From Anolis carolinensis (lineage: Eukaryota): 64,000 nt of DNA. Position 1 is the first letter of the stretch. Each line of letters starts with the position of its first letter. The translations under genes were made by a program, and so were the position numbers. Shown in pieces: positions 11,274-64,000 of the stretch. Location of the stretch: the NCBI RefSeq assembly GCF_035594765.1, contig NC_085841.1, positions 308,397,402 through 308,461,401 of the forward strand, read 5' to 3'. The notes under the pieces were generated by a model that did no database searches, had not been told where the DNA came from, and was given only the letters and a program-made list of their open reading frames with translations.

Positions 11274-11320
11274 CTGTAGCAACTGTCAGTAGGGTTGCCT
11301 TTGGAATGTGGGCGGGACTT
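11274..11320 (-). promoter_or_regulatory. Conserved upstream motif block of ADAM copy 1
   Basis: gTAGCAACtGtCAgTagGGTTgccTTTGGAATGtGGGCGG aligns with the blocks upstream of the other three ADAMs. Confidence 0.6.
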
Positions 11321-11395
11321 AGTGAGTCTGGGCCAAGACAGAAAGGATGGCAGAGAATGGGAAAGGTAGAGCGGGAAGGGAAAGGAGGCCGGCTA

Positions 11396-11446
<51 letters not shown>
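11396..11446. repeat. (CAT)17 microsatellite, probably the tail of a short LINE fragment extending to ~11630
   Basis: Perfect trinucleotide run. Confidence 0.9.
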
Positions 11447-22590: not shown

Positions 22591-22640
22591 TACATAGCAA
22601 CAGCCAATGAGGTTTTCTTTGGAATGGAGGTGGAGCCTGG
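22591..22640 (-). promoter_or_regulatory. Conserved upstream motif block of ADAM copy 2
   Basis: CATAGCAACAGCCAATGAGGTTTTCTTTGGAATGGAGGTGGAG, ~100 bp upstream of the ATG. Confidence 0.65.
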
Positions 22641-32945: not shown

Positions 32946-32995
32946 TACATAGCAACAGCCAATGGGGTTTTCTTTGGAATGGGGGTGGAGCTTGA
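32946..32995 (-). promoter_or_regulatory. Conserved upstream motif block of ADAM copy 3
   Basis: CATAGCAACAGCCAATGGGGTTTTCTTTGGAATGGGGGTGGAG. Confidence 0.65.
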
Positions 32996-33399
32996 ATGAT
33001 CAAGAATGGAGCAGAATAACAGTAGGTAGGTAAGAGTAAAAAGATCCCCATGTCTAGCTGAAAGAGCTGTAGGAAGAAGAGCTCATTTTATTGGGAATGT
33101 CTTCTAAAGATCTCACAATAATTTTGAGATGCAGTCTAAGCCAAAGTCTTAAAATGCCACATATGTTTCTATAAATCTTGGCCACAGTTACCAATGGCTA
33201 GTCCTTTTTTGGTGGGTTATTGCCCATTTGAAATAGGTGTGAAGCCTTCTGGTATATGTAAATATCCCCTTCAGACTTAGATCAACTGATGTCTGGTCAT
33301 CTCAGGCACAGCTTTTTCTTTGACCAGTTACAGATCTGAAGATAAATCTCACAAGTTATTAAACCAAGTAACAGTTATTAGCATTAATATCCGCCTAAG

Positions 33400-37926: not shown

Positions 37927-40900
37927 TGTGATATTCTTCGTATGAAGGAAGCTCAACAGCCAGCAGAGTCTTGTAGGAAAGAGTTTATTCCAAACATTAG
38001 GAAGGCTACTGAGGCTTTGGGTGCACAAAAGCTATATATCCCAGCAATCAGTAGTTCTTACATTACAGCTGTAACAACCAGAGAGTGTGGCTTAAAGGCA
38101 CAGTATACCACATCTCCCCTTCATACATAATAACTACACATCTGACAAGACAAAACAAAATACATTTTATAAAAGTGTTAAAAAAATCATACATCAAAAT
38201 TACAAAAGTCTCTCATTAAAACTTGGCAGCTTCATTACATCACTAGACAGGTAAGAAAATATGTCTTCTATGGGGCCAGAGGTCACTAGTACTTAGCCCA
38301 TCGTTGAGGATGGTCTTCAGCACCATCCTTCTAAGGAGTGTACCTTACAGGTTCAAACACAGGCCTGCCATGCGATGTCACATACGTTGGCTTTCTATCT
38401 GCTATTACATGTGCGTCACTTTTGTTCACAAACATCCCTTTAGAACCATTATATGTTGTATTTCCTTGAATTGTAGTTTCGGGTGTTTGGTTCCGTTGTT
38501 TTAATTGACGCCTATTACGCCGATATACGCGACCGTCCTGATTCTTTATTAGATATGACCAAGGCTGTTTACATTTTTCTATCACAACGGCAGGAAGCCA
38601 TCTTTCTTTGCAATTATTGGATTGCATCCATACCAAATCTCCCTCTCTTAGTGGTTTGAGGGGTCTTGCTGTTCGATCATAAAAATGTTTCTGTCTTTCC
38701 TGAGCTCTTTGTAGATCTTGACGCACGTTAATAGGAATCCTAGGACATAATAAGTCAGTTGTTATGGGAAGTTTACTTCTCAGCATTCTGCCCATCAATA
38801 TTTGTGCAGGTGAATATGATAGTCCTGTCACAGGTGTATTCCGGTACTCCAACAATGCTGCATACAGATCACCCCTTGCCTTTCCTACTTTATGTGTAAG
38901 TTGTTTTATAGACTGGATGGCTCGTTCTACCATACCATTAGATTGTGGATACCCCGGACTACTAAAGCATTGTTCAAATCCCCATTCTTTCGCAAATACT
39001 TTGAATTCTTGACTCGCAAATGGCATATTATCACTCACCACAATTAATGGAGTTCCATGTCTTGCAAACACAGATTTCATCTTGACAATTACTGTTCTTG
39101 CAGTTTTATCAGGTAAACTTACTACTTCTGGGTATTTTGAGAAATAGTCAATTACCAACAGAAAAGAGTGATTGTCCTGTTCAAATATATCCACTCCCAC
39201 CTTCTGCCATGGCCCTTCTGGGATCTCATGGGGTTTAAGTGGTTCCTTTTGATTATTTGGAGCAAAACAAGCACACACAAAACAACTGCCAACAGCTGAC
39301 TCAATATCTTTGGACATACCAGGCCAGTACATCAACTGTCTTGCTCTTTCTTTGGTTCTTTGAATCCCTTGATGGGACTCATGCAGCTGTGCAAGAACAT
39401 TTTGTCTTTGGCTTGCCGGAATGATTATTCTTTCTCCCATGAAAAGAACCCCATCCCTATACCTTAGATGATCTTTAACCGGCCAAAAAGATTTTGCTAT
39501 TGGAGCCACCTTTCTCATGTACTTTGGCCAGCCTTGGTTTAGGTATGTTTGAATCATCCTAAGCTGGGGATCACGTTTTGTTGCTTCTTGTATTAAACCC
39601 ATTTTATCTGGGTGCATGGCTAATGTATTCACTTCGTATATCACTTTCTCATCTCCTATTGGATTTTCCTGACTTCCAGGGTGATCAACAGTAGCTCTTG
39701 ACAAGGTATCAGCCAGATACATAAGTTTACCTGGAGTATATACAAAGTTAAGTTGATACTTCTGAAGCTGCAACAACATTCTTTGCAGACGAGCCGGGGC
39801 ACTGCCTATTGGTTTTTTATAAATTGATTCTAAGGGCTTGTGATCAGTTTGAACTAGAACCATTTTACCAAACACATACTGATGGAACTTTTGTACTGCA
39901 TATACAACAGCAAGCAATTCTTTCTCTATTTGAGCATAATTTTTCTCTGCAGAACTGAGTGCCCTTGAAGCATAAGACACTGGCTTATTATCCTGTAGGA
40001 GACATGCTCCTAAGCCATCTTTTGAAGCATCTGCTTGGATAACAACTGGTTTTGTCACATCAAAATACTGCAGTACAGGTGCATCGCACAACTTTTGCTT
40101 GATCGCCTCAAAAGCTTTCTGATGTTCTGGCATCCATTGAAAACTCATATTTTTCTTTAACAGACTTCTCAATGGCGCTGTCAACTCTGCCTCTTTTGGG
40201 ATGTATTTTGCCAAATACTGTACTGACCCTAGAAATCTAAGCACTCCCTGCCTGTCATTGGGAGGTTTCATTTCTTGAATTGCCTTTACTTTCTCAGTGT
40301 CTGGCCTGACTCCCTCTGCAGTCACAATATGGCCCATATATCTAACAGAGTTTACCCTGAACTGGATCTTTTCTTTGTTAAACTTGATGTTTTTGACACG
40401 TGCTGTTTCCATTACCTGATGTAAAATCTCATCATGTTGTTTACTTGTCTCAGCTGCTATAATCATATCATCAGCAATCATATATACACCTTTTATATGC
40501 CCAAATGTTTCTTGATTTTTCTGTTGAAAAACCTCACTTGAGGATTTAAGCCCAAATGGTAAACGATTAAAACAATACCTTCCCCACGGCGTATTGAATG
40601 TACATAATCTGGATGATGCTTTATCTAGTTTTACCTGCCAATAGCCATCTTTCTCATCTATTATTGTGAAGATTTTCTTTCCAGCTAGGTGACTTAAAAC
40701 TTCCTCAACTGTTGGGATGGTATAATGTTGTCTCCGCACTGCCTTATTTAGATCTCGCGGATCAAGACATATACGCAGAGACCCATTCTTTTTTTCAGTG
40801 ATAACAAGACTGCTCACCCAATCTGTGGGTCCTACAACTTTTGTTATAACTCCCATATTTTCCATCTGATCAAGGGTATCCTTTAGCCTATCATGTATGG

Positions 40901-42504
40901 CAAAGGGCACTCTCCTACATCCTTGGATCACGGGAACCACTGTTGGATCAGTGTGAATGTGGTGATGTCCTTGAAACTCACCGAGACCCTGGAATACTTC
41001 TGGATATAAGCTGAGCAATTTTTCTTGTGTTAATAACCCCTCTGCCTGTATCATATCTACCCTATAAATTAAACCCAAATTCTCACAAGCTGGTCTGCCT
41101 AATAATGGGGTTGTCGAGCAATCTGTCACATAAAACAACAGATTATACACTCCTTTTGCTGTTATACAATCAAACTCAACTGCTCCCATTGGTTGTATTT
41201 TTGTTCCCCCATATGCAACCAGCACTACTTTACTCATAGACATTTGTTTTGCACCAGGTATTCTAGAAAATATACTAAATGGTAACACATTTGCTTCAGC
41301 TCCAGTATCTAATTTAAACTTAATTATACAGTCTCTTATGGAAATATCAGCATACCATCCTGCCTTGTTTGTTATCTGTGTATCCTTCATTTCTTCATCC
41401 AGCTTTCCTATCATTAAATTACTTACATTCAACTCATGAATGTGTTGTCTGGCTTGTATATTCACAGGATTGGTCACCCTTGACCTGCATAACCTGGCAT
41501 AATGATTTTTCTTGCCACACTTGTTGCAGGTCTTTCCAAATGCTGGACATCTCCGAGGTTCATGAGCTGTACCACAATAACCACACTTATTCTGATTTTT
41601 CCAATTGTCTCTGTGTCTCGACTCCCTGGTTCCCAGAGCTTGAGTTATAATCTCGTTGTTTTCTCCATGGCTGTCTTGTATGTTACAATCTTCTTCCGAT
41701 GTTATTGCCATGGTTCTCAGCTGAGCTCTCGTTGTCTCATCAACCCGGCATATCTCCACGGCCTTCTCAAGTGTAAGATCGGCTTCTTGTAACAACTTTT
41801 GTTTCAGTTTCTCTTGCTGTAAACTAAAAACAACTTTATCTCTTATCATCTCATTAACTGCCATTCCAAATTCACAGCTGGCTGCTTTCAGTTTTAGCTC
41901 AGCAATAAATTGCACATTTGTAACTCCAGGACTCTGCATATGGTTCCAGAAACAAAACCTTTCAAACACAATGTTCTTCCGAGGTAAAAAATAAGTCCTA
42001 AACTGTTCCAGAACCTCTGCAATATCTTTCGGGTTCTCCTCGGCAAAAACAAATGTATTATATAAAGAAACTCCTTCCTCTCCCACACAATGTAGCAGGA
42101 TAGCTATCTGCCGCTTCTTTGACACATTCTCAAGTCCCGCTGCAGCAAGATACAACTGAAAGGCCTGTTCCCACCATCTCCAGTTCTCAGCCAAATTACC
42201 TTGCATAGCAAGGGGAGGAGGAGGACGAAATGACTCCATGTCTAAACACTCCTTTTTCGGGGGAGGCTAGCTTCCAGGTTGTAGCACAGGAGAGGTTTGT
42301 ATCCCACTTCTGACACCATGTGATATTCTTCGTATGAAGGAAGCTCAACAGCCAGCAGAGTCTTGTAGGAAAGAGTTTATTCCAAACATTAGGAAGGCTA
42401 CTGAGGCTTTGGGTGCACAAAAGCTATATATCCCAGCAATCAGTAGTTCTTACATTACAGCTGTAACAACCAGAGAGTGTGGCTTAAAGGCACAGTATAC
42501 CACA
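37927..42504 (-). mobile_element. Full-length Ty3/Gypsy LTR retrotransposon (Mag-like)
   Basis: Two identical 186-bp LTRs (37927-38112, 42319-42504, TG..CA); 5-bp TSD CCATT; PBS TGGTGTCAGAAGTGGGAT (tRNA-Leu 3' end); PPT GAAGGGGAGA. Confidence 0.97.
38331..42239 (-). CDS. Gypsy Gag-Pol polyprotein (1302 aa)
   Basis: Two zinc knuckles, protease LDTGA, RT (LPFG, IADD), RNase H (DAS, EKE, TDH), integrase HHCC and D,D35E, in Gypsy domain order. Confidence 0.96.
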   Translation of the reverse strand: MESFRPPPPLAMQGNLAENWRWWEQAFQLYLAAAGLENVSKKRQIAILLHCVGEEGVSLYNTFVFAEENPKDIAEVLEQFRTYFLPRKNIVFERFCFWNHMQSPGVTNVQFIAELKLKAASCEFGMAVNEMIRDKVVFSLQQEKLKQKLLQEADLTLEKAVEICRVDETTRAQLRTMAITSEEDCNIQDSHGENNEIITQALGTRESRHRDNWKNQNKCGYCGTAHEPRRCPAFGKTCNKCGKKNHYARLCRSRVTNPVNIQARQHIHELNVSNLMIGKLDEEMKDTQITNKAGWYADISIRDCIIKFKLDTGAEANVLPFSIFSRIPGAKQMSMSKVVLVAYGGTKIQPMGAVEFDCITAKGVYNLLFYVTDCSTTPLLGRPACENLGLIYRVDMIQAEGLLTQEKLLSLYPEVFQGLGEFQGHHHIHTDPTVVPVIQGCRRVPFAIHDRLKDTLDQMENMGVITKVVGPTDWVSSLVITEKKNGSLRICLDPRDLNKAVRRQHYTIPTVEEVLSHLAGKKIFTIIDEKDGYWQVKLDKASSRLCTFNTPWGRYCFNRLPFGLKSSSEVFQQKNQETFGHIKGVYMIADDMIIAAETSKQHDEILHQVMETARVKNIKFNKEKIQFRVNSVRYMGHIVTAEGVRPDTEKVKAIQEMKPPNDRQGVLRFLGSVQYLAKYIPKEAELTAPLRSLLKKNMSFQWMPEHQKAFEAIKQKLCDAPVLQYFDVTKPVVIQADASKDGLGACLLQDNKPVSYASRALSSAEKNYAQIEKELLAVVYAVQKFHQYVFGKMVLVQTDHKPLESIYKKPIGSAPARLQRMLLQLQKYQLNFVYTPGKLMYLADTLSRATVDHPGSQENPIGDEKVIYEVNTLAMHPDKMGLIQEATKRDPQLRMIQTYLNQGWPKYMRKVAPIAKSFWPVKDHLRYRDGVLFMGERIIIPASQRQNVLAQLHESHQGIQRTKERARQLMYWPGMSKDIESAVGSCFVCACFAPNNQKEPLKPHEIPEGPWQKVGVDIFEQDNHSFLLVIDYFSKYPEVVSLPDKTARTVIVKMKSVFARHGTPLIVVSDNMPFASQEFKVFAKEWGFEQCFSSPGYPQSNGMVERAIQSIKQLTHKVGKARGDLYAALLEYRNTPVTGLSYSPAQILMGRMLRSKLPITTDLLCPRIPINVRQDLQRAQERQKHFYDRTARPLKPLREGDLVWMQSNNCKERWLPAVVIEKCKQPWSYLIKNQDGRVYRRNRRQLKQRNQTPETTIQGNTTYNGSKGMFVNKSDAHVIADRKPTYVTSHGRPVFEPVRYTP

Positions 42505-46870: not shown

Positions 46871-49770
46871 TATGCACATTTGTGGGCAATCATTGGACAG
46901 ATGTGCAGAATTACAATTGTTCAAAAGATTTGGCATTCTAACCCTGAAGATGGACTTTCTAAAAAGAAAGCATGCAAGCCAGTATCCTTTTTTGGTGGGG
47001 GTTTTTAATGTTTGAATTTTTATTGAAACAAACCAGGAAAATTTCATTTTTGAAGTAATCATCAGGATGAAAAGAATATTTGAAAATGTTCTTGTCCTTA
47101 AGAGGTAATAAGTATTTCAACAAACCAAAAATGCATCAAGTTTATTATCAAATTTTGCAAAATAAATATTAATTTGGGACCTCCATGCAGCAATTTTGAA
47201 AAAAAACCTTTTACTCAGAAAATATATAAATGTACATTTATGTAAAATAAATTTTCCTGAAAAATGGTTTTAGCAAGTCCATACTTTTGACACAAACCCC
47301 AATTCTTTTCACAAGTGAGTTTTTGCAAGAAGTTCCAAAGTTTAAAAAAAAACATCAAAATATAATAAATATAAGAAAACTCTTATGTCATTCAAAAGAG
47401 AGAACACCTTAGAAATTATATATTCTTATACACAAGTATGAACATTGCACAAATCTATATCCCTACCAAATTGGAATGATAACTATGAAAGAACTAGATA
47501 TGATGTCCTCAAGTGCTGGAGTGGACACCTGCAAAGAGGATGGGGCAGAGCACACTGGCACACCCGAAATGTCCATTACACTTCGGGTTTTGATTTTAGT
47601 CAATTTCCAGCTACATTTATTTGGAGTTGGGGATATGTTTGTGGGGAAGGGAATCACTTCATTTTTTCTAAAGCTTCAAGGACCTCAAATGTGGCCACAC
47701 ATTGCCAAACAGTAGTCACATATAAGCATGTATCATTGAATATAAAAACCAGGATCATCCATATCATAACATTTCTTATTTCTTTGTATAGAGATAAAAG
47801 TTGGACAGTCAAAAATGCAAAAAATAATTTGAAATGTGGTGATGGATGAGAGTTCTACAGCTACCAAAATACAAATAGATAAAACTAAAAGCAGACAAAG
47901 CCAGAACTCCCAGTATAGTCATATATAAGTTGGTAAAAATGAAGTTTGATGATGAAATAGATAGATCCATATGCAGTCCTTTTCTGCAAGGCTGCTTCCT
48001 CATTAACATGTTATTTTCTCCTCATAGCTAAATAGTTCTTTCATTAATCTAAAAATGTCTCATCGATTTTGGGGTCTTTGATCTGAGGCCCTTGCAAAGC
48101 TAATACCCAAACCTTCTTATAACGTTCTCCTGATTTACTTGCTTACTTGACAACCTGCTACATTAAAAGATGTCTATTTTACTTGCTGTTAAATTCAGCT
48201 TCAGTGAGTAAACATCTGTTGGATAGAACACCAGACTCACTGCTACAGCATATAGTGAGTCAATGGTTTGGATATCTGCTCCAGTACTTGAAGAACCTGC
48301 TGCATTGAGGTCATTATAATCCTGTAAATTATCTGCTTCATTCATGCAGAGCCTCTTTCTGTCCACTTAATAGCACACTGTGAAGGTGGTCATATAACCC
48401 CAGCCAAATCAAGCCAATAGACAGAGAAAAATATCATTGTTATTGGTTGGAGACTCCACCAATATCATTGCTGTCACTTGTCAAGTAACTGACTGAAGGA
48501 AACGTATAGTTAACTAGCTACAGTTTGGCACCATGTGTGAAGGAAGGAAGGTAAAGGACAAGTGAATTGGCATAACACTGCTGACTCTGTGTATCTACAG
48601 TCTCATCTGGGATGGGTTGTTTGAGTTACTTCTTTGCTTGGTGAGTGTCTTAAAATATAGAAGCATATTCTTACATATTATAGCCACGTCCCAAATCTGT
48701 CTGTCTTCAGATATTTCTTTGTCAGCTTAAACACTTTAATGCTGAATATATACAATTGCTCTCATTTATATACTCTTGGTAGACCTGATGTATTTGTTAG
48801 CTGAAAAGGTTAAAGATGCAGCATACTTAACATGAGAGAAAATTACTTATCTATTAAAGAAACGTATGACAGTACATGTAATTTGTTCCCACTCTGTTGT
48901 AACCATAGTCTTGTCTCGGGTAGTCCACCCCACTGCACTGATAGCTTGATTCAAGATCAATGTATGTTGTCTTCACTGTGCTAGGAATGAGTCCAGGTAT
49001 AAATATCTCTTGCAGTGGCTGGAATTCATAGATCAGCCCATGCCACAAGAAGAAAGCTGAGGAGGAATTCAGACCATGGAACCTGGCCTTGGATAATTTT
49101 CCCACTGATGTGAGAATTCAGGTACTGGTGGAAGAACAGGCAGGAAGTCAAACTGGAGGCAGTGAAATTCAAGGATGGCTACAAGCATCCAGGCATGGCT
49201 TCTCACATCTTCCTGTAACAAATAACTGCAAGGTTTTGTTAAAGTTGGACTCCCTCATTCACTTCCAGGAAACTACTGGCATGCAAAATAGACTTGTCTG
49301 ATTTTTCAGGCATTGTTTGTGGCAGTATTAAGAGGATCCTGATTTTATCACAGGATCCAAAATAAAACATGTACTCAGAATTTGCACCGTTCTCCTCAGT
49401 TCGTTGGCATAATGGTAGGATCATCTCCAGAATTCTCTGGTTCAAAAGCTTTTAATGTAAAAAGGATTCTCCCTCCCAATTCACCCCCTATTTAATCTCC
49501 TGTTATATGTTGCTCAGAGTATCTAATATCTCATGTTAGAAAACTGATACCAGTGGACTAGTGGACGATACTTGTCTTAACTATAGGACAGGTAGAACCT
49601 CGGCATATGGCTGAGGGTTTGTAACTCAGGATCTTCACAAACCCTTGTTCCTGGAACAGAAAATATAGCTTCAAAATAATGCTCAGATTGTGCATAGTAA
49701 GTGCATGCCAACATAATATCATAATTAATTTCCTGTGCAATGTTTCATGAATTGTGCATTTGCATGCTGT

Positions 49771-51969
49771 TCAACTTTGGCAGTTTTCTGTAGAATTACA
49801 TTTTGATTTGACTCCTGGGTGGACCCATTCCCTCAGTGTTGAACACCGATGCATTAACTGTGCCTTGAAAAATAGACCCAGGACAACAACAATAACAAGT
49901 GGAGAAAGAAAAAATATAAATCCAAATAAATTGTGTTTTCTGTTGTTCAAAGCACGATTCCATGGTGGAGGGGGGCCACTGTCAATGCTGCCTCCATAGC
50001 CTTTATTTTCACAGTTTGGAGGGTCCCAGCCATAATCACAATGACAATGTTTTTGAGTGTTGCATATTCCTCGATTATGACACTCTGTGACATTACAGTC
50101 ATATTTCAAGAGGGACACATCGAGGCACTGCCTGTCAATGCACATCCTGTCCATGCCACAAGGTGTGCCATCCCTCACAGCTCCGATATCAGCTATCCTC
50201 ATTCCACCATGATAGTCTGTACTCCAGCACTCTTTATTGCCAATGGATGATTGAATTATGGTGCTATGTTCCTCCAGAGAAGGTAACTTACGGATATTTT
50301 CACACTGGATTCGGCCACACAGGATATTATCAGAATGACATCTTGTGTAAGTGCCCTGGTTCAGGCCACAGTTACCAAAACGATCGCCTTCTGCATTTAA
50401 GTTTCTGAAGCAACTCTCAGAAGCAACTGTGGCTTTCTTTCCAAATATCATTTTACATTGCCTAACATGAGTAGTACAATTTCCATTATAACAGTATGCA
50501 TTTTCATCGCATGGGGCACCATCTTGTACATAAACATCTTTAGGACACCACTCAGAAGTACCATTGCAATACTCAGGAAGATCACAAATACTAGTATTAT
50601 CTCTACAAATAGATTGAGCTGGAGCATATTGACATTTTGCACAGCACAGTCCAAAAGCACAAATAGCACCTGAACGCAATCTACAGTTAGACTGACAACA
50701 TCGATCAGTTTCACAGTCGGCTTTGGAACCACAGTCACATTGTTCTCCGTTTTCTACTATTCTGTTTCCACAATATTTGACTTTATATATTTTATCATGA
50801 TCTGGTGGAATTAACAAACAATCTGTATTCCTTAGTTTGAAATAGTCACTGTAACTGCAATTGCTAAACATATCACTGTTTGAGTGAAATTCATCCATGA
50901 TACAAGAACGCCGATTACACCTACAGTAAATACCATCATGTCTCATTCCAAGAATATGTCCTAATTCATGGGCAAATGTGACAGAAAAATATAATAAAGT
51001 GTAATCCACATATGAAGCTACAGCAGATGCTCCTGTCTTATCACAAATTGTTCCTATAGGTGCTAGTCCTAGTGTCCTTCCAAAATATTTGTATACAAAT
51101 AAATGGGCTGCATCATTTTCTAGACGCTTACTAAGTGAATTTCTTCTCCATATGGCAAAAGAATTGAAAGTTTTCATTATGCTATCAGCAATATATATGA
51201 GATTTTTTTCTGTCCAGATTTCTAATCCAGCAACAGATACCTTAACAGAAAGTGGTTCATAAAATGCATCTGCAATATGGACAATATCCAGAACTTGTAT
51301 ACCAATAACAGTTTCATTTTTGTCAAATTTCAAATATCGTTCATGTTCTATCACAATTGCTACCTTCACATACCTGGTGTGTGCCCACCAGTCACTTCTG
51401 GAATTACTTTTGGTTAGTTCATTCTCTGTGTTTGGCATCATGCTCTCCTGGTGGTTTTGCTCTTCTTCTGTTACTCCACATTTCATTTTTACATCACCCT
51501 CCTTTTCTTCCAATCGATACACTACATGTTGAAAGTTAGGAGAGGCCTGGACAGGTTCAATCTCATAGGTGTTGTTTTCTAATTGAAATAGACCCCTAAG
51601 TCCCCCTGAACAAGTGCTGATGGCAGCCAAAGAAGAGAGTTTTCCCTTTATATAACCCTGGTAGAAACAGTTGTTCCGAATGAATGGATAATCCACCTGG
51701 AGTTCTCCTTGCTTAGAGTAGGTCAAGACCGGAATGTTTTTAGGAGCAAAGCTCTTCTTTTGGCGAAGGTGCACCATGTGACCCCTGCCTTCAATTTGCA
51801 AATGGTAGGTGACCTCTAGTGCCTCTTGTTGTCCATACCTTGGCATCACTTTCCTTGGAATGGTCACTTCATAGGAAGCATACCTAAAACCCTGTGGTGG
51901 TGTCTGACTTTCCATCTCATTGAGAACATTCCATAAAATCAGCAGCAGCTGGGAAGATTTATTCAACAT
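49771..51969 (-). CDS. ADAM20/ADAM21-like metalloproteinase, copy 4 (732 aa from the first ATG)
   Basis: HELGHILGMRHD, full domain set, intact ORF. The track start at 51990 is GTG; first ATG is 51969. Confidence 0.94.
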   Translation of the reverse strand: MLNKSSQLLLILWNVLNEMESQTPPQGFRYASYEVTIPRKVMPRYGQQEALEVTYHLQIEGRGHMVHLRQKKSFAPKNIPVLTYSKQGELQVDYPFIRNNCFYQGYIKGKLSSLAAISTCSGGLRGLFQLENNTYEIEPVQASPNFQHVVYRLEEKEGDVKMKCGVTEEEQNHQESMMPNTENELTKSNSRSDWWAHTRYVKVAIVIEHERYLKFDKNETVIGIQVLDIVHIADAFYEPLSVKVSVAGLEIWTEKNLIYIADSIMKTFNSFAIWRRNSLSKRLENDAAHLFVYKYFGRTLGLAPIGTICDKTGASAVASYVDYTLLYFSVTFAHELGHILGMRHDGIYCRCNRRSCIMDEFHSNSDMFSNCSYSDYFKLRNTDCLLIPPDHDKIYKVKYCGNRIVENGEQCDCGSKADCETDRCCQSNCRLRSGAICAFGLCCAKCQYAPAQSICRDNTSICDLPEYCNGTSEWCPKDVYVQDGAPCDENAYCYNGNCTTHVRQCKMIFGKKATVASESCFRNLNAEGDRFGNCGLNQGTYTRCHSDNILCGRIQCENIRKLPSLEEHSTIIQSSIGNKECWSTDYHGGMRIADIGAVRDGTPCGMDRMCIDRQCLDVSLLKYDCNVTECHNRGICNTQKHCHCDYGWDPPNCENKGYGGSIDSGPPPPWNRALNNRKHNLFGFIFFLSPLVIVVVLGLFFKAQLMHRCSTLREWVHPGVKSKCNSTENCQS

Positions 51970-52122
51970 GTTATCTGAGGAGAACTCCACGCTGCCTTCC
52001 TAGGGAGAACAGAGAGCCTTTTACATAGAATCATAGAATCATAGAATCATAGAATAGTAGAGTTGGAAGAGACCTCAAGGGCCATCTAGTCCAACCCCCC
52101 GCTAAGAAGCAGGAAATCGCAT

Positions 52123-54858
52123 TCAAAGCACCCCCGACAGATGGCCATCCAGCCTCTGCTTAAAAGCCTCCAAAGAAGGAGCCTCCACCACAGTCCGGGG
52201 GAGAGAGTTCCACTGCCGAACAGCCCTCACAGTGAGGAAGTTCTTCCTGATGTTCAGGTGGAATCTCCTTTCCTGTAGTTTGAAGCCATTGTTCCGTGTC
52301 CTAGTCTGCAGGGCAGCAGAAAATAAGCTTGCTCCCTCCTCCCTATGACTTCCCCTCACATATTTGTACATGGCTATCATGTCTCCTCTCAGCCTTCTCT
52401 TCTGCAGGCTAAACATGCCCAGCTCTTTAAGCCTCTCCTCATAGGGCTTGTTCTCCAGACCCTTAATCATTTTAGTTGCCCTCCTCTGGACGCTTTCCAG
52501 CTTGTCAGCATCTCCCTTCATCTGCGGTGCCCAAAACTGGACACAGTATTCCAGGTGTGGTCTGACCAAGGCAGAATAGAGGGGGAGCATGACTTCCCTG
52601 GATCTAGACGTTATTCCCCTATTGATGCAGGCCAAAATCCCATTGGCTTTTTTAGCTGCCGCGTCACATTGTAGGCTCATGTTTAACTTGTTGTCCACAA
52701 GGACTCCAAGATCTTTTTCGCACACACTGCTGTCAAGCCAGGCGTCCCCCATTCTGTATCTTTGATTTCCATTTTTTCTGCCGAAGTGAAGTATCTTGCA
52801 TTTGTCCCTGTTGAACTTCATTTTGTTAGTTTCGGCCCATCTCTCTAGTCTGTCAAGATCGTTTTGAATTCTGCTCCTGTCTTCTGGAGTGTTAGCTATC
52901 CCTCCGAGTTTGGTGTCATCTGCAAACTTGATGATCGTGCCTTCTAACCCTTCGTCTAAGTCGTTAATAAAGATGTTGAACAGAACCGGGCCCAGGACGG
53001 AGCCCTGCGGCACTCCACTTGTCACTTCTTTCCATGATGAAGACGACGCATTGGTGAGCACCCTTTGGGTTCGTTCGCTTAGCCAATTACAGATCCACCT
53101 AACCGTAGTTTTGTCTAGCCCACATTTTACTAGTTTGTTTGCCAGAAGGTCGTGGGGGACTTTGTCGAAGGCCTTACTGAAATCTAGATATGCTACATCC
53201 ACGGCATTCCCTGTATCGACCCAACTCGTAACTCTATCGAAAAAAGAGATCAGATTAGTCTGGCATGACTTGTTTTTGGTAAATCCGTGTTGACTATTAG
53301 CAATGACCGCATTTGTTTCTAAGTGTTTGCAGACCACTTCCTTAATGATCTTTTCCAGAATCTTGCCTGGTATTGATGTGAGGCTGACCGGACGGTAATT
53401 GTTTGGGTCGTTCTTTTTTCCCTTCTTGAAGATAGGGACCACATTCGCCCTCCTCCAATCTGCTGGGACTTCTCCTGTTCTCCAAGAACTCTCGAAGATG
53501 ATTGCCAGTGGTTCTGAAATAACTTCCGCTAGTTCCTTCAATACTCTTGGATGTAGCTGATCTGGCCCTGGGGACTTGAATTCGTTTAGAGTGGCCAGGT
53601 GTTCCTGGACAACTTGTTTCCCTATTTGGGGTTGGATTTCCCCCAATCCTTCGTCCATTCCATGTTGCTGAGGTTGAAGATGGCTTTCTTTTTGTGAGAA
53701 GACCGAGGCAAAGAAGGCATTAAGCAGTTCTGCCTTTTCCCTATCCCCTGTCACCATCACCCCATCTACTCCTTGCAGTGGCCCTATCGCCTCCTTTTTC
53801 TTCCTTTTTCTACCAACATAAGCAAAAAAACCTTTTTTGTTGTTTTTTATGTCCCTGGCAAGCCTGAGCTCATTTTGCGCTTTAGCCTTGCGAACCTTTT
53901 CCCTACAGGAGTTGGCTATACGTTTGAATTCTTCTTTGGTGATTTCTCCCCTTTTCCACTTCTTGTGCATGTCACTTTTGAGCTTTAGCTCAGTTAGAAG
54001 TTCTTTGGACATCCATTCTGGCTTCTTTGCACTTGTCTTATTTTTCTTCTTTGTTGGCACTGTTTGCATTTGCGCCTTGAGTATTTCACTTTTGAAAAAC
54101 TCCCATCCATCCTTAACTCCCTTGTTTTTTAATATCGGCGTCCATGGAATGCCGCTCAGTAATTCCTTCATTTTTTGGAAGTCAGCTCTCTTAAAGTCCA
54201 GAATGCGTGTTTGACTTGTCTTAGTTTCAGCATTCCTTTGTATTGCAAACTGCAGGAGCACATGGTCACTTGCCCCTAAGGATCCAACCACTTCAACTGT
54301 ATTGATCAGGTCTTCCACATTTGTTAAGATTAGATCAAGAGTTGCTGATCCCCTTGTTGCCTCTTCTACCTTCTGGACCATAAAATTATCTGCAAGGCAA
54401 GTGAGGAATTTGTTGGACTTTGTACTCTTGGCTGAGTTTGTTTTCCAGCAGATATCGGGATAATTGAAATCGCCCATGACTACTATATCTCTTCTTTGTG
54501 CCTGTTTGGTCAGCTGTTGACAGAAGGCTTCATCAAGTCCTTCATCCTGACTCGGAGGTCTGTAGTAGACACCCACGACAAGATCTTTTTGAGTCCCGGT
54601 TCCCTTGATTCTTATCCAGATGCTTTCAAGCTGGTTTCCCGGATTACAGTCTTGCATTTCTTCTGCAACGTAACTGTTTTTGACATATAAAGCTACTCCC
54701 CCTCCTCTCCCCTTTGTTCTATTTCTGTGAAAGAGGTTATAGCCCTCAATGGTTAAATTCCAGTGATGGGAGTCATCCCACCAGGTTTCAGTGATGCCTA
54801 TGACATCGTATGTGTGGTGCTGTGCTAGGAGTTGGAGTTCGTCTTGCTTATTTCCCAT
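52123..54858 (-). CDS. CR1 ORF2: APE endonuclease and reverse transcriptase (frame stays open upstream past the ORF1 stop)
   Basis: ITETW, YRPP, GDFN, SDH endonuclease motifs; PQGSVLGP and FADD RT motifs; no stops. Confidence 0.96.
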
Positions 54859-55049
54859 GCTCTGAGCATTAGTGTAAAGACATGTAAGCCCCTGTGACCT
54901 CCCCTCGAACTGTTTATTTGGGATTATTGTGCTCTCTGTACTTGGTCCTTGCTGTGTTTGTGCAGCCCTCCGTTTAGCCTTACGGCGGTTCCCTGTGGTC
55001 GTGGGTAATATAGTGTTCGCCAGGCTGTTGTTCCCCTCCCCCAGTGGAT

Positions 55050-56321
55050 TTAGTTTAAAGTGCGCCTGATGAGGTTTGTGAGTCTGTGTGCAAAAAGATG
55101 TTTTCCTACTTGTGTGAGATGCACCCCATCGCTTGCCAGTAGTCCATCCTCTTGGAAGAGTAGACCATGGTCAAGGAAGCCAAAATGCTCCTCTTGACAC
55201 CATTTTCTGAGCCAGTTATTGACCTGTACTATTTTTCCGGCCCTTGTAGAGCCATGTCCTACAACGGGGAGGAGGGATGAAAAGATCACATGTACATTAT
55301 ACAGTTTTAGCTTTGTTCCCAGAGCTCGAAAATCATTTGTGATCTTTTGAAAAGTATGCCTAGCGGTGTCATTGGTACCTACATGAATCAACATAAGGTG
55401 GGGAGGGTGATGGGGCTTTAGGAGCCTGCTGAGCCTCTGAGTGATATGGTGTATTTTTGCCCCCGGGAGGCAGCATGTTTCTCGAGCCATCCCATCCGGT
55501 CTGGAAATGATGGCTTCCGTTCCTCTAAGGAGGGAGTCACCTACTACCAAGACCTGTTTCCTTTGAGGATTGACAGGGTCCCTTTTGTGCAAGACAGTGT
55601 GTATGTCCCCTGAAGAGTGTTCCTGTTGAAGTGAATCATGTAGGTGTAAAGTGTTGTCCTCCTCCTCAACATCCCCAGTGCATTCATCAATGACAATCCA
55701 TTGAGATACATCCGAGAGCCCATTACTCTCCCAAGGATGTTCCTGTTGCTCCTGGTCTATGATTGGGGATGGAGCATTTGCATGATTACATAAGTGTGAC
55801 TGTGGTGATGCACTGTCCCCGTCAGGGCTATCCCCTGCGCATTGATCCAGGATGGTCCACTGAGTGGTATCTAAGAAACTGTGGTCCTCCACAAGATGTG
55901 TTTCCTGATTGTATGTTAATGATGTAAGAATTTCAAATCTGTTGTGTAAATGCAGCTGAGCAGAGGAGTTCTGCGGAGGCTGCCTGGTCCTGCGTCTCCT
56001 TCTATGGGTGACCTCCTTCCAAGCCTGAGGGTTGTCTACCTTTGAGTTGATCTCCCCATAAGGTTCCTGATCATGGTCTTGGTGGTGTTGGTGTGATGCA
56101 GGCTGCTGATCTACAGCAGCGTGTTGTGCAGTGTCCAAGAAGAGCTCGAGTGCCTGAATGTCCTTAAGGGTCTTAATACGGTGCTCGAGCTGTTGGATCC
56201 TCTGCTCCATCAGAGTCATCTGTTTGCATTTGGAGCAGATGTAGTTGTCTAGTTTTTGTGTGAAAAAGCGGAACATGCCACAGCTGGTGCATGTGATGGG
56301 AATGTTTTGCTTTTGTTGCAT
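55050..56321 (-). CDS. CR1 ORF1p: zinc finger, coiled coil, SGNH esterase
   Basis: CTSC..CSKC, heptad segment, GDSL block (VVGDSLL), GTND, DGVH. Confidence 0.93.
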
Positions 56322-56478
56322 CTCTTGGTGAGCGTGGTGGCCAAGTGGGATCTTTGTACAGTTAAGTAATATGCACGCACTTTATGTGCAGACTGCAACA
56401 AACCACGTCTTTGTGTATTTGTTTATGTTGCTTTGTTTCTTGTATGTACTGCAAAGGATAGTTAGTAAAGGTGCCTTT

Positions 56479-56792
56479 TTCTGCGAGAACCAACTGCCCT
56501 TCTGGGATCAGGCTCTGGCAGAAACTCACACTGGCAAATAAAGCTTTCCCAGAAACTCAATTAACAGGGGACAATGCCTGCTGTCAATCAACTTAAGTAC
56601 CTGGCTCTCTTTCAACACAACAGTCACACAACAGTTAGACTTTGACCACAGGAGCCAAGCCCAAACTCAGTTTAAAATCTTAGCCAAATCTTAGCCAAAT
56701 CCTACCTGAAGCCAGGGAGCAAAAATGTCCTCCTGCTTCCTCTGCTTCTGCGAGAACCAACTGCCCTTCTGGGATCAGGCTCTGGCAGAAAC
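56479..56792 (-). repeat. 47-bp perfect direct repeat in the CR1 5' UTR (56479-56525 and 56746-56792)
   Basis: TTCTGCGAGAACCAACTGCCCTTCTGGGATCAGGCTCTGGCAGAAAC occurs twice. Confidence 0.95.
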
Positions 56793-56862
56793 ACCTGGGT
56801 TGGGCCTGAAGAAAGATTGAAAAGAGGTTGTGTGTGTGTGATTGAGATTGAGAAGTGTTCTA

Positions 56863-56910
56863 TCCATAGCAACAGTCAATGGGTTTCCATTGGAATGGGG
56901 GCGGAGCTTG
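56863..56910 (-). promoter_or_regulatory. Conserved upstream motif block of ADAM copy 4, displaced by the CR1
   Basis: CATAGCAACAGTCAATGGGTTTCCATTGGAATGGGGGCGGAG aligns with the other three blocks. Confidence 0.65.
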
Positions 56911-57014
56911 GGAATTCAATGGTGGAAAACATTGAGGGGTGGATGGATGGCAAAGGAATGTGTCTGAATGGTAGTTAATGATATGGCAAGAGGAGTAGAA
57001 GCTGAGCGCACTGA

Positions 57015-60000
57015 GGCCCCTTCCACACAGGCAGAAAAATCCCACAATGTCTACTAGGCATGTGCGATCCATGAAAAAAATGGTTCAAAACTTGCTTCAA
57101 AAGTAGGGGGCACTGGCGCTTCATTTCTAAAGTCATTTCCAAATTTTGAAGCAAAAAGTTCAAAACTTTCCAAAGCTTCTGAATCTTTGTATGTACCTCG
57201 TTAATGGCAGATGTGCATGTGCATGGAGGAAATCATTATTGTCAATGGGGAAACTTGACAGGCTTCTATCTCCCTCATTTTTTGAGTTATTCTGATGAAA
57301 CTAGCTACAGTGGTAGAACACATTGACCACTGTTAGCTCACCAAATCTAACAACATTTGACTTATCTTCAGATTTTTGGTGAATTTTCAAAGTTTTTATT
57401 TAAAAACATTTTTAATAATAACAAAAATCTGTTCCTGGTTTGGAAGTGTTATTTCCTGTTTAATGGGTTTGCTGGGGCTGAGAGTGTGTGACTTGCCCAA
57501 GATCACCCAGTGGGTTTCCATGGCTGAGTGGGGAATCAAGCCATCAGAGTCCAACTCTCAAACCACTCCCTCCCTCCCTCTCTCCCTCCCTCTCTCTAAA
57601 CTTCTCATATCTTCCAAGAATTCACATATGAAAATTTTGTCAAGACAGTCAAGTGAGGACAAAAGAGGGTGGAGAATGTTAAGAGGAGAAAGGAACTGGG
57701 ACATCTGGGAATTGTAGTTTTAAAGTGGGCACACTCCATTACAGTTACTATTGGGGAAACTTCTGCTCCAGCCCAGTGCTTTCTGGGAAATGTAGTTTAG
57801 TGCAGGCTTTGTGGCTTTTCGCTTCCCATTAAATAAATGCAGAAAATTTCGAGGCTCCATTCTCCCTCATTTTTAAAGCTATTGGGGTGAAACTTGATAA
57901 AATGACAGAAGATATTTATCACTCTTTGCCTATCAAGTTTCACAATGTTTCACCCATCCACTGATTTTTTTGGGAAATTTCAAAGTTTTTTAAAACAACA
58001 TTTTTTTAAAAAAAGCTACAAGAACTACGCCCCTGCCTCTCCCTCCCTCTTCCGTCAGCCCTGATTGGCTTAGAGGCACAGTCAGGTTTTGCTTCCCTCA
58101 TATTGACACACAACCACATAACTTTGGTCAGGTTTATATATACTATTATTTCCTTAACTCCTCATTGCAGATTCCATGATTGTATATATTATAATAATTA
58201 GACTGTCTCTCAATGCCACAAATAGCTGCTCCAGCCTAATGCTTTCTGGGAAATGTATTTTAGTGCTGGCTTGTGGCTTCTCGCTTCCCATTAAATAAAT
58301 GGGGAAAATTCAGAGGCTCCTTTCTCCCTCATTTTTAAAGCTATTGGGGTGAAACTTGCTAAAATGGCAGAAGATATTTATCACTCTTTGTCTATCAAAT
58401 TTCATATTTAAAAAATAATCTTTATTAAAGCGTTTTTTTCAAAGATTAAAAAGCAAAAAGGGCAAAAAGAATTCAACATGAGACAATAAATATAAAATAT
58501 AAAATATCCTATATAGAAGGAATAGTCTCTATGAGAACGAGGGAGGGTCAGAGAGTGCGGGTTTTAGTAAAAGGAAAAATATAAAAAATAAAAAGTGTAT
58601 AAGATAGGATTAAAAACATAAAGACAGAAGAGTATGTGATGTTGACTTCCAAAAAATCTTCGTGGAGGTTTTTCCCTTTTCCTTCTTCCTCTGCTATTTC
58701 TTTATTCTTTATCTTTATCTTTCTTTATTTCTTTATCTTCTTTCTCCTTGTCTTCTTTCCATTTCTCTTATCTGGTAAGCTTTTTTCCTTTTTCCTCTTT
58801 TGTTGTTTTTTCCCCCTATAAATGTATACATTTATATGCAGACATCTTATATTTCAGTTACTTTGTCTATGTATTTGTTTATATCAGTATCTTAAACTTT
58901 TTACCCTTTAAATATTCTGTTACACTACACCAATCTGTCTCCTTTATTGGCTTTCCCTTACTTTTTAGAAAGGTTAGTCTATCCTATTCTAACAATTTCC
59001 TGTAAAATTTTGTTATTTTTTTAAAAATTGTTTGCATAATTTCCCCCCGAAAAATGTTTTGTTCTTCAAATCCAATTTCTTTGTCTATTTTAAAATGTTC
59101 CTTTATCTGCCAATATTGATACCAGGAGATATTTTGTCCAGTTTATTCATTTCCTGTTGTGTCTTCATTTTTTATTCTATTTGACAACCACCTTCTACCC
59201 CATTAAAATCTCCCATTATTATCAAATGTTCAAACTCTTGATTGCTAATATGGTTTTTAAAATTTTCTATGAAGACTGTCTGCTCCGTTTGGGGCTTATA
59301 TATTGCATAACAGTATATTTATGCCTTGTATTGTTATTATCACCCCTATAAATCTCCCTTCTCTATCTTTGAAGGATAGTTTGGCCAGGATTTTTTCATC
59401 TATATATATCACTACTCCTTTATTTTTTCTAATGCTGATGCATGAAACATCTTTCCCATTTTTTATTTTTATTTTTTGCATTATGTGCGTTTCTTGAAGT
59501 GCAATCACCTGGTATCTTTTTTTCCTTAGTGTATTAAATACTTTATTTTTTTCCGAGTTTAACCCATTAATATTTGAGTATATTTTTAACTCACTCATCT
59601 TGGGCCTTTTTTCTCTTGCTCCTCTTCTACTTCCTCTTCTTCTTCCTCTACTTCTTCTATCACCTCTTCTTCTGGTTGTTCTTCCACATTCTCTAAATTA
59701 CTTTCGTACTTCGTCTTATATTCATTCTATATCCCTCTATATCCAGATCTTCTTTTTCCGATGATTCTGTTCTCTGTCTCTTGGGTTTTTTCCTCCCTTT
59801 ATATTTCGTTTCCATTTCCCCCCCTCCTTCCATTCTTATTGTGTTATAAAATTCTCTTGCTCTATGCTCGGAGGTAATCCAATAGCTTTGGTCTTTGTAT
59901 GTCGTCATTAATCCTTCTTCTTTTTCCCATCTGAATCGTACATTTTGTTTTTTCAACTCATCTGTCAAAAAAGTGTTTTTCTTTCTTCTACTTGTTATTG

Positions 60001-62183: not shown

Positions 62184-64000
62184 ATTTATTTATTTATTTC
62201 GTGTCAAAAGCATTGGTACAGCAAATACATTTCAAATAATGGAAATAAAATAGAAAATAAAAGAAATCACAGGCAACTAAATAGTTTTGGACCAAAAGCG
62301 GGCAACAGCAACCTCATTGTCTGTAGCTTTAAACAACTCCTCCTCCGTACATGAGGCAGGGCATTGTGGGCAAGCATACATATGCTGAGTTGTTTGTTCA
62401 GCTCCACAGTCACACAAGGTGGAGGATTCCTCCAGGTAGTGCCACCTTGCCAAGTTGTCTTTTGATCTGCCCACTCCACTTCTGAGTCTGTTCAGGGACT
62501 TCCAAGTTGCCCATTCCTGGTTTGCCCCTGGAGGAAGACCCTCTTGGGGGGCCATCCAGTTAGAATTGCCAGGTTTAGCTGCCCAGAGGGACACCCTTGC
62601 TGTTGCTGGAGGAACATCAAGAGGAGTGGTGGTTCTCATGAAGCCCTTCCTTGATTTGAGTCTACTGGGAGGAGGCTGATAGTCATGCAGTGGGTGGCTT
62701 TCACAATGTTCAACCTTTTTTCTCTCACCGTTAGCAGCAACTTCCCATCGCACGTCAGGAGGGGCAATGCCAGCTAACTTGTAGAGTTTATCAACAGGTG
62801 TAGGTTTAAGGCATCCCGTGATGATTCTGCATGTTTCATTCAGTGCTATGTCCACCTGCTTTGCATGGGCAGACTTGTGCCAAACAGGACAGGCATACTC
62901 TGCAGTTGAGAAAGACAAGGCCAGGGCTGATGTTCTTATTACTTGTGGGTCTGCTCCCCATATGCTGCCAGTCAGTTTCCGCAGGATGTTATTGCGTGCA
63001 GCTACTTTGTGCTTGGTGTTCATGCAGTGTTTCCTATATGTTAGTGTTCGGTCTAAGGTGACACCAAGGTATTTAGGATGGAAACAGTGTTCGAGCTCTT
63101 GGCCTTCCCAAGTAACTTTCAGTTTCCTGTTGGCTTCGCGGTTACGTAGGTGGAAAGCACACACTTGTGTCTTGGCAGGGTTAGGCTTCAGGTGGTTCTC
63201 TTTGTAGTAGCTGGAGAGATCTTTCAAGGCATTGGTGAGTTGCTTTTCAACTGTTTCAAAATCTTTTGCTTGTGTTGTAAGGCCAAGGTCATCAGCATAT
63301 ATAAAGCTCTTTGTGAGTGGTGGTAGTGGCTGATCGTTCGTGAAGATGTTAAATAAGGTTGGTGCAAGAACGCTGCCTTGGGGTAAACCATTATTTTGCC
63401 TCCTCCATCTGCTTTTCTGGCCCTGAAACTCCACATAGAAGCTGCGGTTTTCTAAGAGGGTCTGGATAGTTTTTGTAAAGTCAAAGTCCCGGGTGATATG
63501 GTAGACTTTAGGCAGCATTTTTCTATGTTGCACCGTGTCATAGGCTGCCATAAGGTCCACAAAAATTGTTCCCGTGATGCAGCCTTTCTCGTAGCCTTCC
63601 TCAATATGTTCAGTCAGATGAAGAATTTGACCTGTACAGTTTTTCCCTGGTCTGAAACCTGCTTGTTGTGCAATAAGCTTGGGTTCGATAACAGGTCCTA
63701 GTCGATTTAATAGCATCCTCTCATAGACTTTATATAGATGACATAAGAGGGAGATTGGTCGATAGTTCCTGGCATTGGAGGCATCTTTACCAGGTTTTAA
63801 GATGGCAATTATCTTAGTTTTCCTCCATGCTCTGGGAATCTGTTTGTGTGCCAGGCATTGATTGTAGAATTTCAAAAGCCAGTTTTCAGCTTTGGCCCCC
63901 AAGTGTTTGATTTGCTCCATCATCAGGTCATCTAGGCCAGGTGCTTTACCAGTCTTACATCGCTTGATGGCTTCTCTGAGTTCTTTCAGGTTTAGAGGAG
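62184..64000 (-). mobile_element. Vingi (Ingi-related) LINE, continues beyond the window
   Basis: (TAAA)n tail; long intact RT ORF. Confidence 0.85.
62277..63923 (-). CDS. Vingi reverse transcriptase ORF (partial; true start probably outside the window)
   Basis: YRPISLL, QAGFR, LPQGSVLAP, YADD, C-terminal CDCG..H..C; no RNase H. Confidence 0.88.
   Translation of the reverse strand: MMEQIKHLGAKAENWLLKFYNQCLAHKQIPRAWRKTKIIAILKPGKDASNARNYRPISLLCHLYKVYERMLLNRLGPVIEPKLIAQQAGFRPGKNCTGQILHLTEHIEEGYEKGCITGTIFVDLMAAYDTVQHRKMLPKVYHITRDFDFTKTIQTLLENRSFYVEFQGQKSRWRRQNNGLPQGSVLAPTLFNIFTNDQPLPPLTKSFIYADDLGLTTQAKDFETVEKQLTNALKDLSSYYKENHLKPNPAKTQVCAFHLRNREANRKLKVTWEGQELEHCFHPKYLGVTLDRTLTYRKHCMNTKHKVAARNNILRKLTGSIWGADPQVIRTSALALSFSTAEYACPVWHKSAHAKQVDIALNETCRIITGCLKPTPVDKLYKLAGIAPPDVRWEVAANGERKKVEHCESHPLHDYQPPPSRLKSRKGFMRTTTPLDVPPATARVSLWAAKPGNSNWMAPQEGLPPGANQEWATWKSLNRLRSGVGRSKDNLARWHYLEESSTLCDCGAEQTTQHMYACPQCPASCTEEELFKATDNEVAVARFWSKTI

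What the first reader, a model, noticed from the sequence alone, without database searches (positions are those of the whole stretch)
51969..56910. Intact CR1 inserted in sense between an ADAM gene and its conserved upstream block: possible promoter capture and new intron
Seen: the motif block lies 97-137 bp upstream of the ATG in copies 1-3 but 4.9 kb upstream in copy 4. Removing the CR1 (52024-56792) restores ~127 bp. The CR1 is co-oriented with the gene and both its ORFs are intact. On the minus strand the flanks read CCCAG|GT just 5' of the CR1 and CTCTCTGTTCTCCCTAG| (AG at 52001-52000) just 3' of its tail. Before insertion this GT..AG pair spanned only ~25 nt, too short to splice; now it spans ~4.8 kb. 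Further donor-like sites lie in the CR1 UTR (TTCAG|GTAGGA ~56705, CCAG|GTACTT ~56600). Inference: a presumed germline promoter may drive a retrotransposition-competent CR1, while splicing rescues ADAM expression from the same transcript.
Basis: partly seen in the sequence, partly recalled or inferred. Interest (0 to 1): 0.8.

Follow-up and report, generated by a model that had tools for sequence, protein, structure and literature searches.

The report
Young, not-yet-fixed CR1 in ADAM leader
A complete jumping gene (CR1) sits in the untranslated leader of one of four tandem sperm-type ADAM genes in the green anole reference genome, but other anoles still carry the gene without it, so it is a recent, ordinary insertion variant; the idea that it became a new intron is untested.

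Summary
The window is Anolis carolinensis rAnoCar3.1. It carries four intronless ADAM20/21-like ORFs on the minus strand.

A full-length CR1 (52023-56790, both ORFs open) lies in sense between the copy-4 ATG (51969) and a block (about 56867-56912). That block is conserved upstream of such genes across squamates.

New result: the insertion is not fixed.
- A 5,296-nt contig of run X1 (about 13x, DNA-like) joins 56791 directly to 52022 with no mismatch.
- A 1,003-nt contig of run X4 (RNA-like) does the same and ends at 56844, just downstream of the block.
- The Anolis sagrei orthologue also has the empty site, with no target duplication.

So the CR1 landed recently in a transcribed 5' leader, at least 54 nt downstream of the start of transcription.

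"Promoter capture plus new intron" stays untested, because no filled-allele transcript was seen. The proposed donor is weak and is absent in A. sagrei.

Published resequencing of 13 A. carolinensis genomes found 27,802 polymorphic CR1 insertions, so this is a new member of a known kind. The filled allele most likely lowers ADAM copy-4 output.

Low to moderate interest. The scan had not reported this polymorphism before.

The parts
49771..51969 (-). ADAM20/21-like gene, copy 4 of the tandem array: single-exon CDS, 732 aa from the ATG at 51969, stop codon included
   Evidence: ORF and Pfam domains. Zinc motif HELGHILGMRH. Exact protein annotated in GCA_035594765.1. A. sagrei orthologue 86% identical, dN/dS 0.39.
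51970..52022 (-). Proximal 53 nt of the original 5' leader, now between the CR1 tail and the ATG. Holds the acceptor-like CTCTCTGTTCTCCCTAG| (AG 52001-52000).
   Evidence: Sequence. Covered colinearly by the empty-allele contigs of X1 and X4.
52023..56790 (-). Full-length CR1 LINE, 4,768 nt. The cut is ambiguous by up to 3 nt because of a shared TGT. It is absent from the empty allele.
   Evidence: The joint 56791|52022 in X1 record 1, and in X4 record 16 by depth arithmetic. A. sagrei empty site. 5'-truncated relatives elsewhere in the window.
52024..52055 (-). CR1 3' terminal microsatellite (ATTCTATG)x4
   Evidence: Sequence
52123..54858 (-). CR1 ORF2, 911 aa, open: endonuclease + reverse transcriptase (FADD at residue 645)
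55050..56321 (-). CR1 ORF1, 423 aa, open: C-terminal GDSL/SGNH esterase-like domain
56322..56790 (-). CR1 5' UTR, 469 nt. Its first 47 nt (56746-56792) recur exactly 267 nt downstream (56479-56525), which gives a monomer structure. Holds the donor-like CAG|GTAGGA at 56705.
56791..56849 (-). Distal part of the original 5' leader, now upstream of the CR1. Transcribed at least from 56844 in the empty allele. Inr-like TCAATCT with its A at 56849 (weak motif). Donor-like CAG|GT at 56794-56793.
   Evidence: X4 contig end at 56844. Motif scan. Sequence.
56867..56912 (-). Conserved promoter-proximal block: GC box CTCCGCCCCC, CATTCCAA, CCAAT-like CATTGAC, and GTTGCTATGG (X-box half-site-like)
   Evidence: Aligned in all four copies and in A. 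sagrei, Phrynosoma, Python and two Logan contigs. The factor names are from my own knowledge and were not tested.

Best explanation
This is a recent CR1 retrotransposition that is still segregating in Anolis carolinensis. A full-length, coding-intact CR1 inserted in sense into the roughly 110-nt 5' leader of the fourth gene of a tandem array of intronless, testis-type (group I) ADAM genes. It left no target duplication or deletion, only a 3-nt microhomology.

The ancestral empty allele persists in other individuals. There the gene is transcribed as one colinear unit that starts just downstream of a squamate-conserved promoter block.

Shown: the insertion, its boundaries, its absence in two other samples and in A. 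sagrei, the conservation of the block, and purifying selection on the gene.

Inferred: on the filled allele, the ADAM promoter, if it stays active, reads into the CR1. That would give a leader-CR1-ADAM RNA on which ADAM is the third ORF. The allele would then most likely give less ADAM copy-4 protein, and the three paralogues next to it could cushion the loss. It behaves like the many low-frequency, mildly deleterious full-length LINE insertions known in this species.
For: - X1 record 1 (5,296 nt, depth 12.9, 0 mismatches) lies on 56910-56791 and then directly on 52022-51600.
- X4 record 16 (1,003 nt, depth 5.96) lies on 51600-52022. Its last 54 letters account exactly for the depth of 1.34 in bin 56800-56999, which places them at 56791-56844.
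- X4 is RNA-like. Its single-copy depth is 6, yet the CR1 5' part reaches only about 160, against about 63,000-73,000 at depth 13 in X1. It also has no depth over the genomic repeat at 57000-57399.
- The A. sagrei orthologous site is empty and aligns without a gap to the joined flanks.
- The window is identical to GCA_035594765.1.
- The block is conserved in A. sagrei, Phrynosoma and Python.
- dN/dS is 0.39.
- Ruggiero et al. 2017 (PMC5389967) found 27,802 polymorphic CR1 insertions in 13 genomes, 2,578 of them full length, mostly at low frequency and under length-dependent negative selection.
Against: - The run kinds are guesses. The tool lists X1 and X4 as 'RNA?', and my DNA/RNA assignment rests on depth arguments.
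- Only two runs were informative; X9 and X10 have no depth on the flanks. The allele frequency is therefore unknown, and the insertion could be common in some populations.
- No filled-junction contig was listed in any run, so the filled allele is attested only by the reference assembly.
- The effect on ADAM expression is pure inference.
Confidence: 0.85

Rival explanations
1. On the filled allele the conserved ADAM promoter drives a chimeric transcript, which gives a retrotransposition-competent CR1 a germline promoter. Part of that RNA is spliced from a donor at 56795|56794 (or 56706|56705) to the acceptor at 52000|51999. The CR1 is thereby removed as a new 4.8-kb intron and ADAM expression is rescued.
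For: - The start of transcription lies upstream of the insertion point in the empty allele: the X4 contig reaches 56844.
- The CR1 is in sense and intact.
- An acceptor-like CTCTCTGTTCTCCCTAG lies 22 nt past the CR1 tail.
- A moderate donor lies at 56705 (score 4.4).
- Only two poly(A)-signal hexamers occur in sense inside the CR1.
Against: - No transcript of the filled allele was examined.
- The boundary donor is weak (2.2 against a consensus of 8.6) and is CAG|CT in A. sagrei, so it is not a selected site.
- The insertion is not fixed, so nothing shows it is tolerated, let alone useful.
- Young LINEs in germ cells are usual targets of silencing (general knowledge), which could shut the promoter instead.
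Confidence: 0.1
2. The CR1 at this place is an assembly artefact of the reference, and all animals are really empty.
For: Both informative runs show only the empty form, and no filled-junction contig was listed.
Against: - The element has the exact anatomy of a true insertion. Its 5' end falls at the start of a 5' UTR monomer: the first 47 nt are repeated exactly 267 nt downstream.
- It has a complete 3' (ATTCTATG)4 tail, microhomology at the joint, and no loss of flank relative to A. sagrei.
- Contigs of short-read runs break at high-copy repeats, so missing filled junctions are expected even in carriers.
Confidence: 0.03
3. The joints seen in X1 and X4 are spliced RNA from a filled allele, not an empty allele.
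For: The tool's guess for both runs is 'RNA?'.
Against: - The joint coincides with the CR1 ends. It does not fall at any GT..AG pair within the 3-nt ambiguity.
- The X1 contig runs about 2.9 kb past the stop codon at even depth, in a run whose 1.34 Gb of contigs fits a genome.
- A. sagrei DNA shows the same empty arrangement.
Confidence: 0.03

Closest known systems
Polymorphic LINE (CR1) insertions of Anolis carolinensis (Ruggiero et al. 2017, PMC5389967)
   Same: Same species and same clade. The element is full length (4.8 kb, within the 4.6-5.8 kb given there). It is present in one genome and absent in others. It belongs to the class found to be rare and selected against according to length.
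   Different: This particular site, in the 5' leader of a group I testicular ADAM gene and downstream of a conserved promoter block, was not found described. Its frequency is unknown.
Group I (intronless) testicular ADAM genes, ADAM20/21-like (Bahudhanapati et al. 2015, PMC4550289)
   Same: Single-exon CDS, tandem clusters, full domain set, and orthologues that NCBI names ADAM20-like or ADAM21-like in many squamates.
   Different: Testis expression of the anole copies was not shown here. The conserved upstream block is a squamate feature that I did not find described in the papers read.
Intron gain by retroelement insertion (for example the scan's own GEMIN4/CR1 case, s1-519614)
   Same: A CR1 lies in sense inside a transcribed region, next to an AGGT-like target.
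   Different: In the GEMIN4 case the duplicated target supplies both splice sites and the intron is shared by two species. Here there is no duplication, the acceptor is a chance site 22 nt away, the donor is weak, the allele is not fixed, and no spliced RNA is known.

Membership tests
CR1 clade LINE, full-length autonomous copy | ORF2 with apurinic-type endonuclease followed by reverse transcriptase | tested here: met
   Pfam Exo_endo_phos 5.8e-16 and RVT_1 9.3e-35 in the 911-aa ORF. FADD motif present.
CR1 clade LINE, full-length autonomous copy | ORF1 upstream of ORF2, open | tested here: met
   423-aa ORF with a GDSL/SGNH-like domain
CR1 clade LINE, full-length autonomous copy | 3' end made of an 8-nt microsatellite instead of a poly(A) tail (own knowledge of CR1) | tested here: met
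   (ATTCTATG)x4 at 52024-52055
CR1 clade LINE, full-length autonomous copy | 5'-truncated relatives sharing the 3' end | tested here: met
   Ten further fragments in the window at 77-94% identity, most of them 3' parts
Presence/absence (insertion) polymorphism | Empty allele with intact flanks in animals of the same species | tested here: met
   X1 and X4 contigs join 56791 to 52022 with 0 mismatches. The species label is the same coded organism as all holders.
Presence/absence (insertion) polymorphism | Outgroup shows the empty state, so this is an insertion and not a deletion | tested here: met
   A. sagrei L002 9900-9960 aligns across the joint without a gap
Group I testicular ADAM (ADAM20/21-like) | Intronless CDS with propeptide, metalloprotease, disintegrin, cysteine-rich and transmembrane parts | tested here: met
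Group I testicular ADAM (ADAM20/21-like) | Expression mainly in testis | not testable with these tools
   Run tissues are coded. X4 looks like RNA that holds 91% of the gene's words, but its tissue is unknown.
Retroelement-derived new intron | Spliced transcripts that remove the element | not tested
   The single read-laying run met only empty-allele contigs
Retroelement-derived new intron | Usable GT..AG pair around the element | tested here: inconclusive
   The pair is present. The donor at 56794 is weak, the donor at 56705 is moderate, and the acceptor has a 14-nt pyrimidine run. The matrix was recalled from memory and is rough.
Retroelement-derived new intron | Fixed or shared between species | tested here: not met
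   Not fixed within the species and absent in A. sagrei

The most novel reading that the evidence does not exclude
The filled allele is a natural experiment that is still segregating. A squamate-conserved, germline-active ADAM promoter transcribes an intact CR1 with a 58-nt host leader, which makes this copy an unusually well-expressed source element. Its offspring would then carry the ADAM leader as a 5' transduction. Weak splicing to the chance acceptor at 52000 would keep some ADAM output, so this would be the first step of an intron gain caught before fixation.
Probability: 0.1. Interest if true: 0.6.

Novelty: new member of a known kind. Interest (0 to 1): 0.3.

Why it matters
As it stands, this is one more of the tens of thousands of polymorphic CR1 insertions of the green anole, and the reference genome happens to carry the derived allele.

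Its value is practical in three ways.
- Annotation: the 4.9-kb gap between the promoter block and the ATG in the reference is not the normal structure of this gene. Annotators and users of rAnoCar3.1 should know that.
- Experiment: both alleles exist, so heterozygous males would allow a clean allele-specific test. It would show what a sense, full-length LINE in a 5' leader does to a germline gene: read-in transcription, silencing or splicing.
- Promoter: the conserved block now has a likely start of transcription 15-25 nt downstream of it. That makes it a good candidate core promoter for squamate testis-type ADAM genes.

Tried and rejected
- Exact-protein look-up for other assemblies of copy 4 gave only the reference itself. 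The older AnoCar2.0 locus could not be fetched.
- The two UniRef/Ensembl models from AnoCar2.0 (H9GUJ2, H9GUF9) begin with a short exon, MDSDGLIPHS. It maps to a high-copy repeat at about 57551 and is spliced to an acceptor inside the CDS. I take this as a prediction artefact. It says nothing about filled versus empty.
- Runs X9 and X10 gave no depth on the unique flanks. They are uninformative and are not evidence of absence.
- A fuzzy-regex search for the block timed out. It was replaced by alignments.
- The Inr-like motif downstream of the block is expected by chance about once per 130 nt. It is mentioned only as compatible with the X4 contig end.
- A paper search for ADAM20 + ADAM21 + intronless + testis found nothing with all four terms.
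- The turtle (Malaclemys) homologue shows no block, so conservation is claimed for squamates only.
- In some searches the two flanks were joined only inside a local script, to compare them with the A. sagrei site and to count distances.
Full report
**What is in the window.** The window is identical to chromosome CM069367.1 of Anolis carolinensis assembly GCA_035594765.1.

On the minus strand lie four single-exon ORFs of 725-743 aa. Each has a reprolysin propeptide, an M12B metalloprotease, a disintegrin domain and an ADAM cysteine-rich domain. Each also has an intact HExGHxxGxxH zinc motif and a C-terminal hydrophobic anchor.

Their relatives in some forty squamates are named ADAM20-like or ADAM21-like by NCBI. 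This is the 'group I', intronless, testis-type ADAM class, which Bahudhanapati et al. 2015 describe as occurring in tandem clusters in amniotes, Anolis included (PMC4550289). The paralogues are old: 57-72% amino-acid identity and dS 0.47-1.0.

**The observation.** Between copy 4 (ATG at 51969) and its upstream region lies a 4.77-kb CR1 in the same orientation.
- ORF1 (55050-56321, 423 aa) has a GDSL/SGNH-like domain.
- ORF2 (52123-54858, 911 aa) has endonuclease and reverse transcriptase domains with FADD. Both ORFs are open.
- The 3' end is (ATTCTATG)x4.
- The first 47 nt recur exactly 267 nt downstream, so the 5' UTR is built of monomers.

The upstream block (GC box, CATTCCAA, CATTGAC/CATTGGC, GTTGCTATGG) aligns in all four copies. 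It also aligns upstream of homologues in A. sagrei, Phrynosoma platyrhinos, Python bivittatus and two unnamed Logan contigs. It does not appear in a turtle.

**The new fact: the insertion is not fixed.** I searched public runs with the unique copy-4 gene. I then laid four of them on 51600-57590.
- Run X1 has a 5,296-nt contig (depth 12.9, no mismatch). Its letters 1-120 lie on 56910-56791 and its letters 121-543 lie on 52022-51600. It skips exactly the CR1.
- Run X4 has a 1,003-nt contig (depth 5.96) lying on 51600-52022, with 54 more letters beyond. The only X4 depth in bin 56800-56999 is 1.34, which equals 5.96 x 45/200. Those 54 letters are therefore 56791-56844. The contig crosses the same empty joint and stops at 56844.
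- Runs X9 and X10 have no depth on the unique flanks and say nothing.

The tool cannot tell DNA from RNA for these runs, so the following rests on depth.
- X1 behaves like a genome: 1.34 Gb of contigs, even depth of about 13, and the contig runs 2.9 kb past the stop codon.
- X4 behaves like RNA. Its single-copy depth is 6, yet the CR1 5' part reaches only about 160, where X1 has about 63,000-73,000. The genomic repeat at 57000-57399 has no depth at all.

**Direction of the change.** The A. sagrei orthologue (86% identical protein) was fetched with its flanks. Its upstream sequence aligns to the two A. carolinensis flanks, joined inside a script, without any gap at the joint: caggtgt|aaaagg against cagctgt|agaagg.

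The empty state is therefore ancestral. The CR1 inserted without target duplication or deletion. Only TGT is shared between the upstream flank and the end of the CR1 tail, which makes the cut ambiguous by up to 3 nt.

The joint cannot be read as a GT..AG intron within that ambiguity. Together with the DNA-like X1 contig, this excludes splicing as the source of the joint.

**Where transcription starts.** If X4 is RNA, the copy-4 transcript of the empty allele is colinear, with no intron in the leader. It reaches at least 56844. That is 23 nt downstream of the last block motif (GTTGCTA ends at 56867) and 5 nt downstream of an Inr-like TCAATCT (a weak motif that is common by chance).

The CR1 therefore landed at least 54 nt inside the transcribed leader, not between promoter and start site.

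- On a rough donor matrix written from memory, the boundary donor CAG|GTGTTT scores 2.2 against 8.6 for the consensus.
- CAG|GTAGGA at 56705 scores 4.4 and is the only donor of 4 or more in the whole CR1.
- The boundary donor is CAG|CT in A. sagrei, so it is a chance site.
- The acceptor has a fair 14-nt pyrimidine run.
- In sense, the CR1 holds one AATAAA (54918) and one ATTAAA (54133).

An unspliced leader-CR1-ADAM RNA would carry ADAM as its third ORF, so little ADAM would be made from it.

The gene itself has been under purifying selection since the split from A. sagrei (dN/dS 0.39, dS 0.18). Three intact paralogues lie next to it.

My reading is that the filled allele is a mildly deleterious or nearly neutral hypomorph.

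**Comparison with what is known.** Ruggiero et al. 2017 (PMC5389967) resequenced 13 A. carolinensis genomes.
- They found 27,802 polymorphic CR1 insertions, 2,578 of them full length.
- Most were at low frequency.
- They found signs of length-dependent negative selection.
- Full-length CR1 is given there as 4.6-5.8 kb.

The present element fits that class in every tested respect. The site itself I did not find described.

That case had a duplicated AGGT target and was fixed. Here neither holds.

**Verdict.** This is a real and well-described feature, but an ordinary one: a young, segregating, full-length CR1 insertion in the 5' leader of ADAM copy 4. The reference carries the derived allele, and the gene's normal structure is the empty one.

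Promoter capture and intron birth are possible but have no evidence. They are directly testable because both alleles exist.

Noticed in passing
window 54856-55065 (minus strand): ORF1 ends ...CAC TTT AAA CTA A. The U_UUA_AAC heptamer sits just before the TAA stop. ORF2's frame is -1 relative to ORF1 and is open all the way from the heptamer to the ORF2 ATG at 54858. This is compatible with the frameshift idea of earlier notes s1-528401 and s1-519648. Most family contigs read TAG instead of TAA at the ORF1 stop (55050 T>C).
   Followed up: partly
window 38331-42239 (minus strand): A 1,302-aa open ORF with RT, RNase H and integrase domains lies between ADAM copies 3 and 4. It is the pol of a Ty3/gypsy-like LTR element. 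It was only noted; nothing was built from it.
   Followed up: no
window 62277-63923 (minus strand): A 548-aa ORF with a reverse transcriptase domain. This is another retroelement upstream of the array. Its clade was not determined.
   Followed up: no
window about 57525-57551 (minus strand) and 49215-49251: The Ensembl/UniProt models H9GUJ2 and H9GUF9 of this gene take a first coding exon (..DSDGLIPHS) from a high-copy repeat upstream of the block. H9GUJ2 also takes a C-terminal extension downstream of the stop. These are probably prediction artefacts. The NCBI model equals the plain 732-aa ORF.
   Followed up: partly
window 56867-56912, 32950-32996, 22595-22641, 11277-11323; L002 9826-9868; L006, L007: The upstream block is conserved across iguanian lizards and a python, at about 100-170 nt from the ATG. 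It combines a GC box, a CATTCC (TEAD-like) motif, a CCAAT-like motif and a GTTGCTATGG (RFX half-site-like) motif. The factor assignments are from memory and were not tested.
   Followed up: partly
window about 11330-11420 (minus strand): A long (ATG)n microsatellite lies directly upstream of the block of copy 1 and replaces the sequence that copies 2-4 share there.
   Followed up: no
window 57000-57590: The stretch upstream of the block is itself repetitive in the genome. Its depth is thousands-fold in the DNA-like runs. It has none in X4 at 57000-57399 and some at 57400-57590.
   Followed up: no
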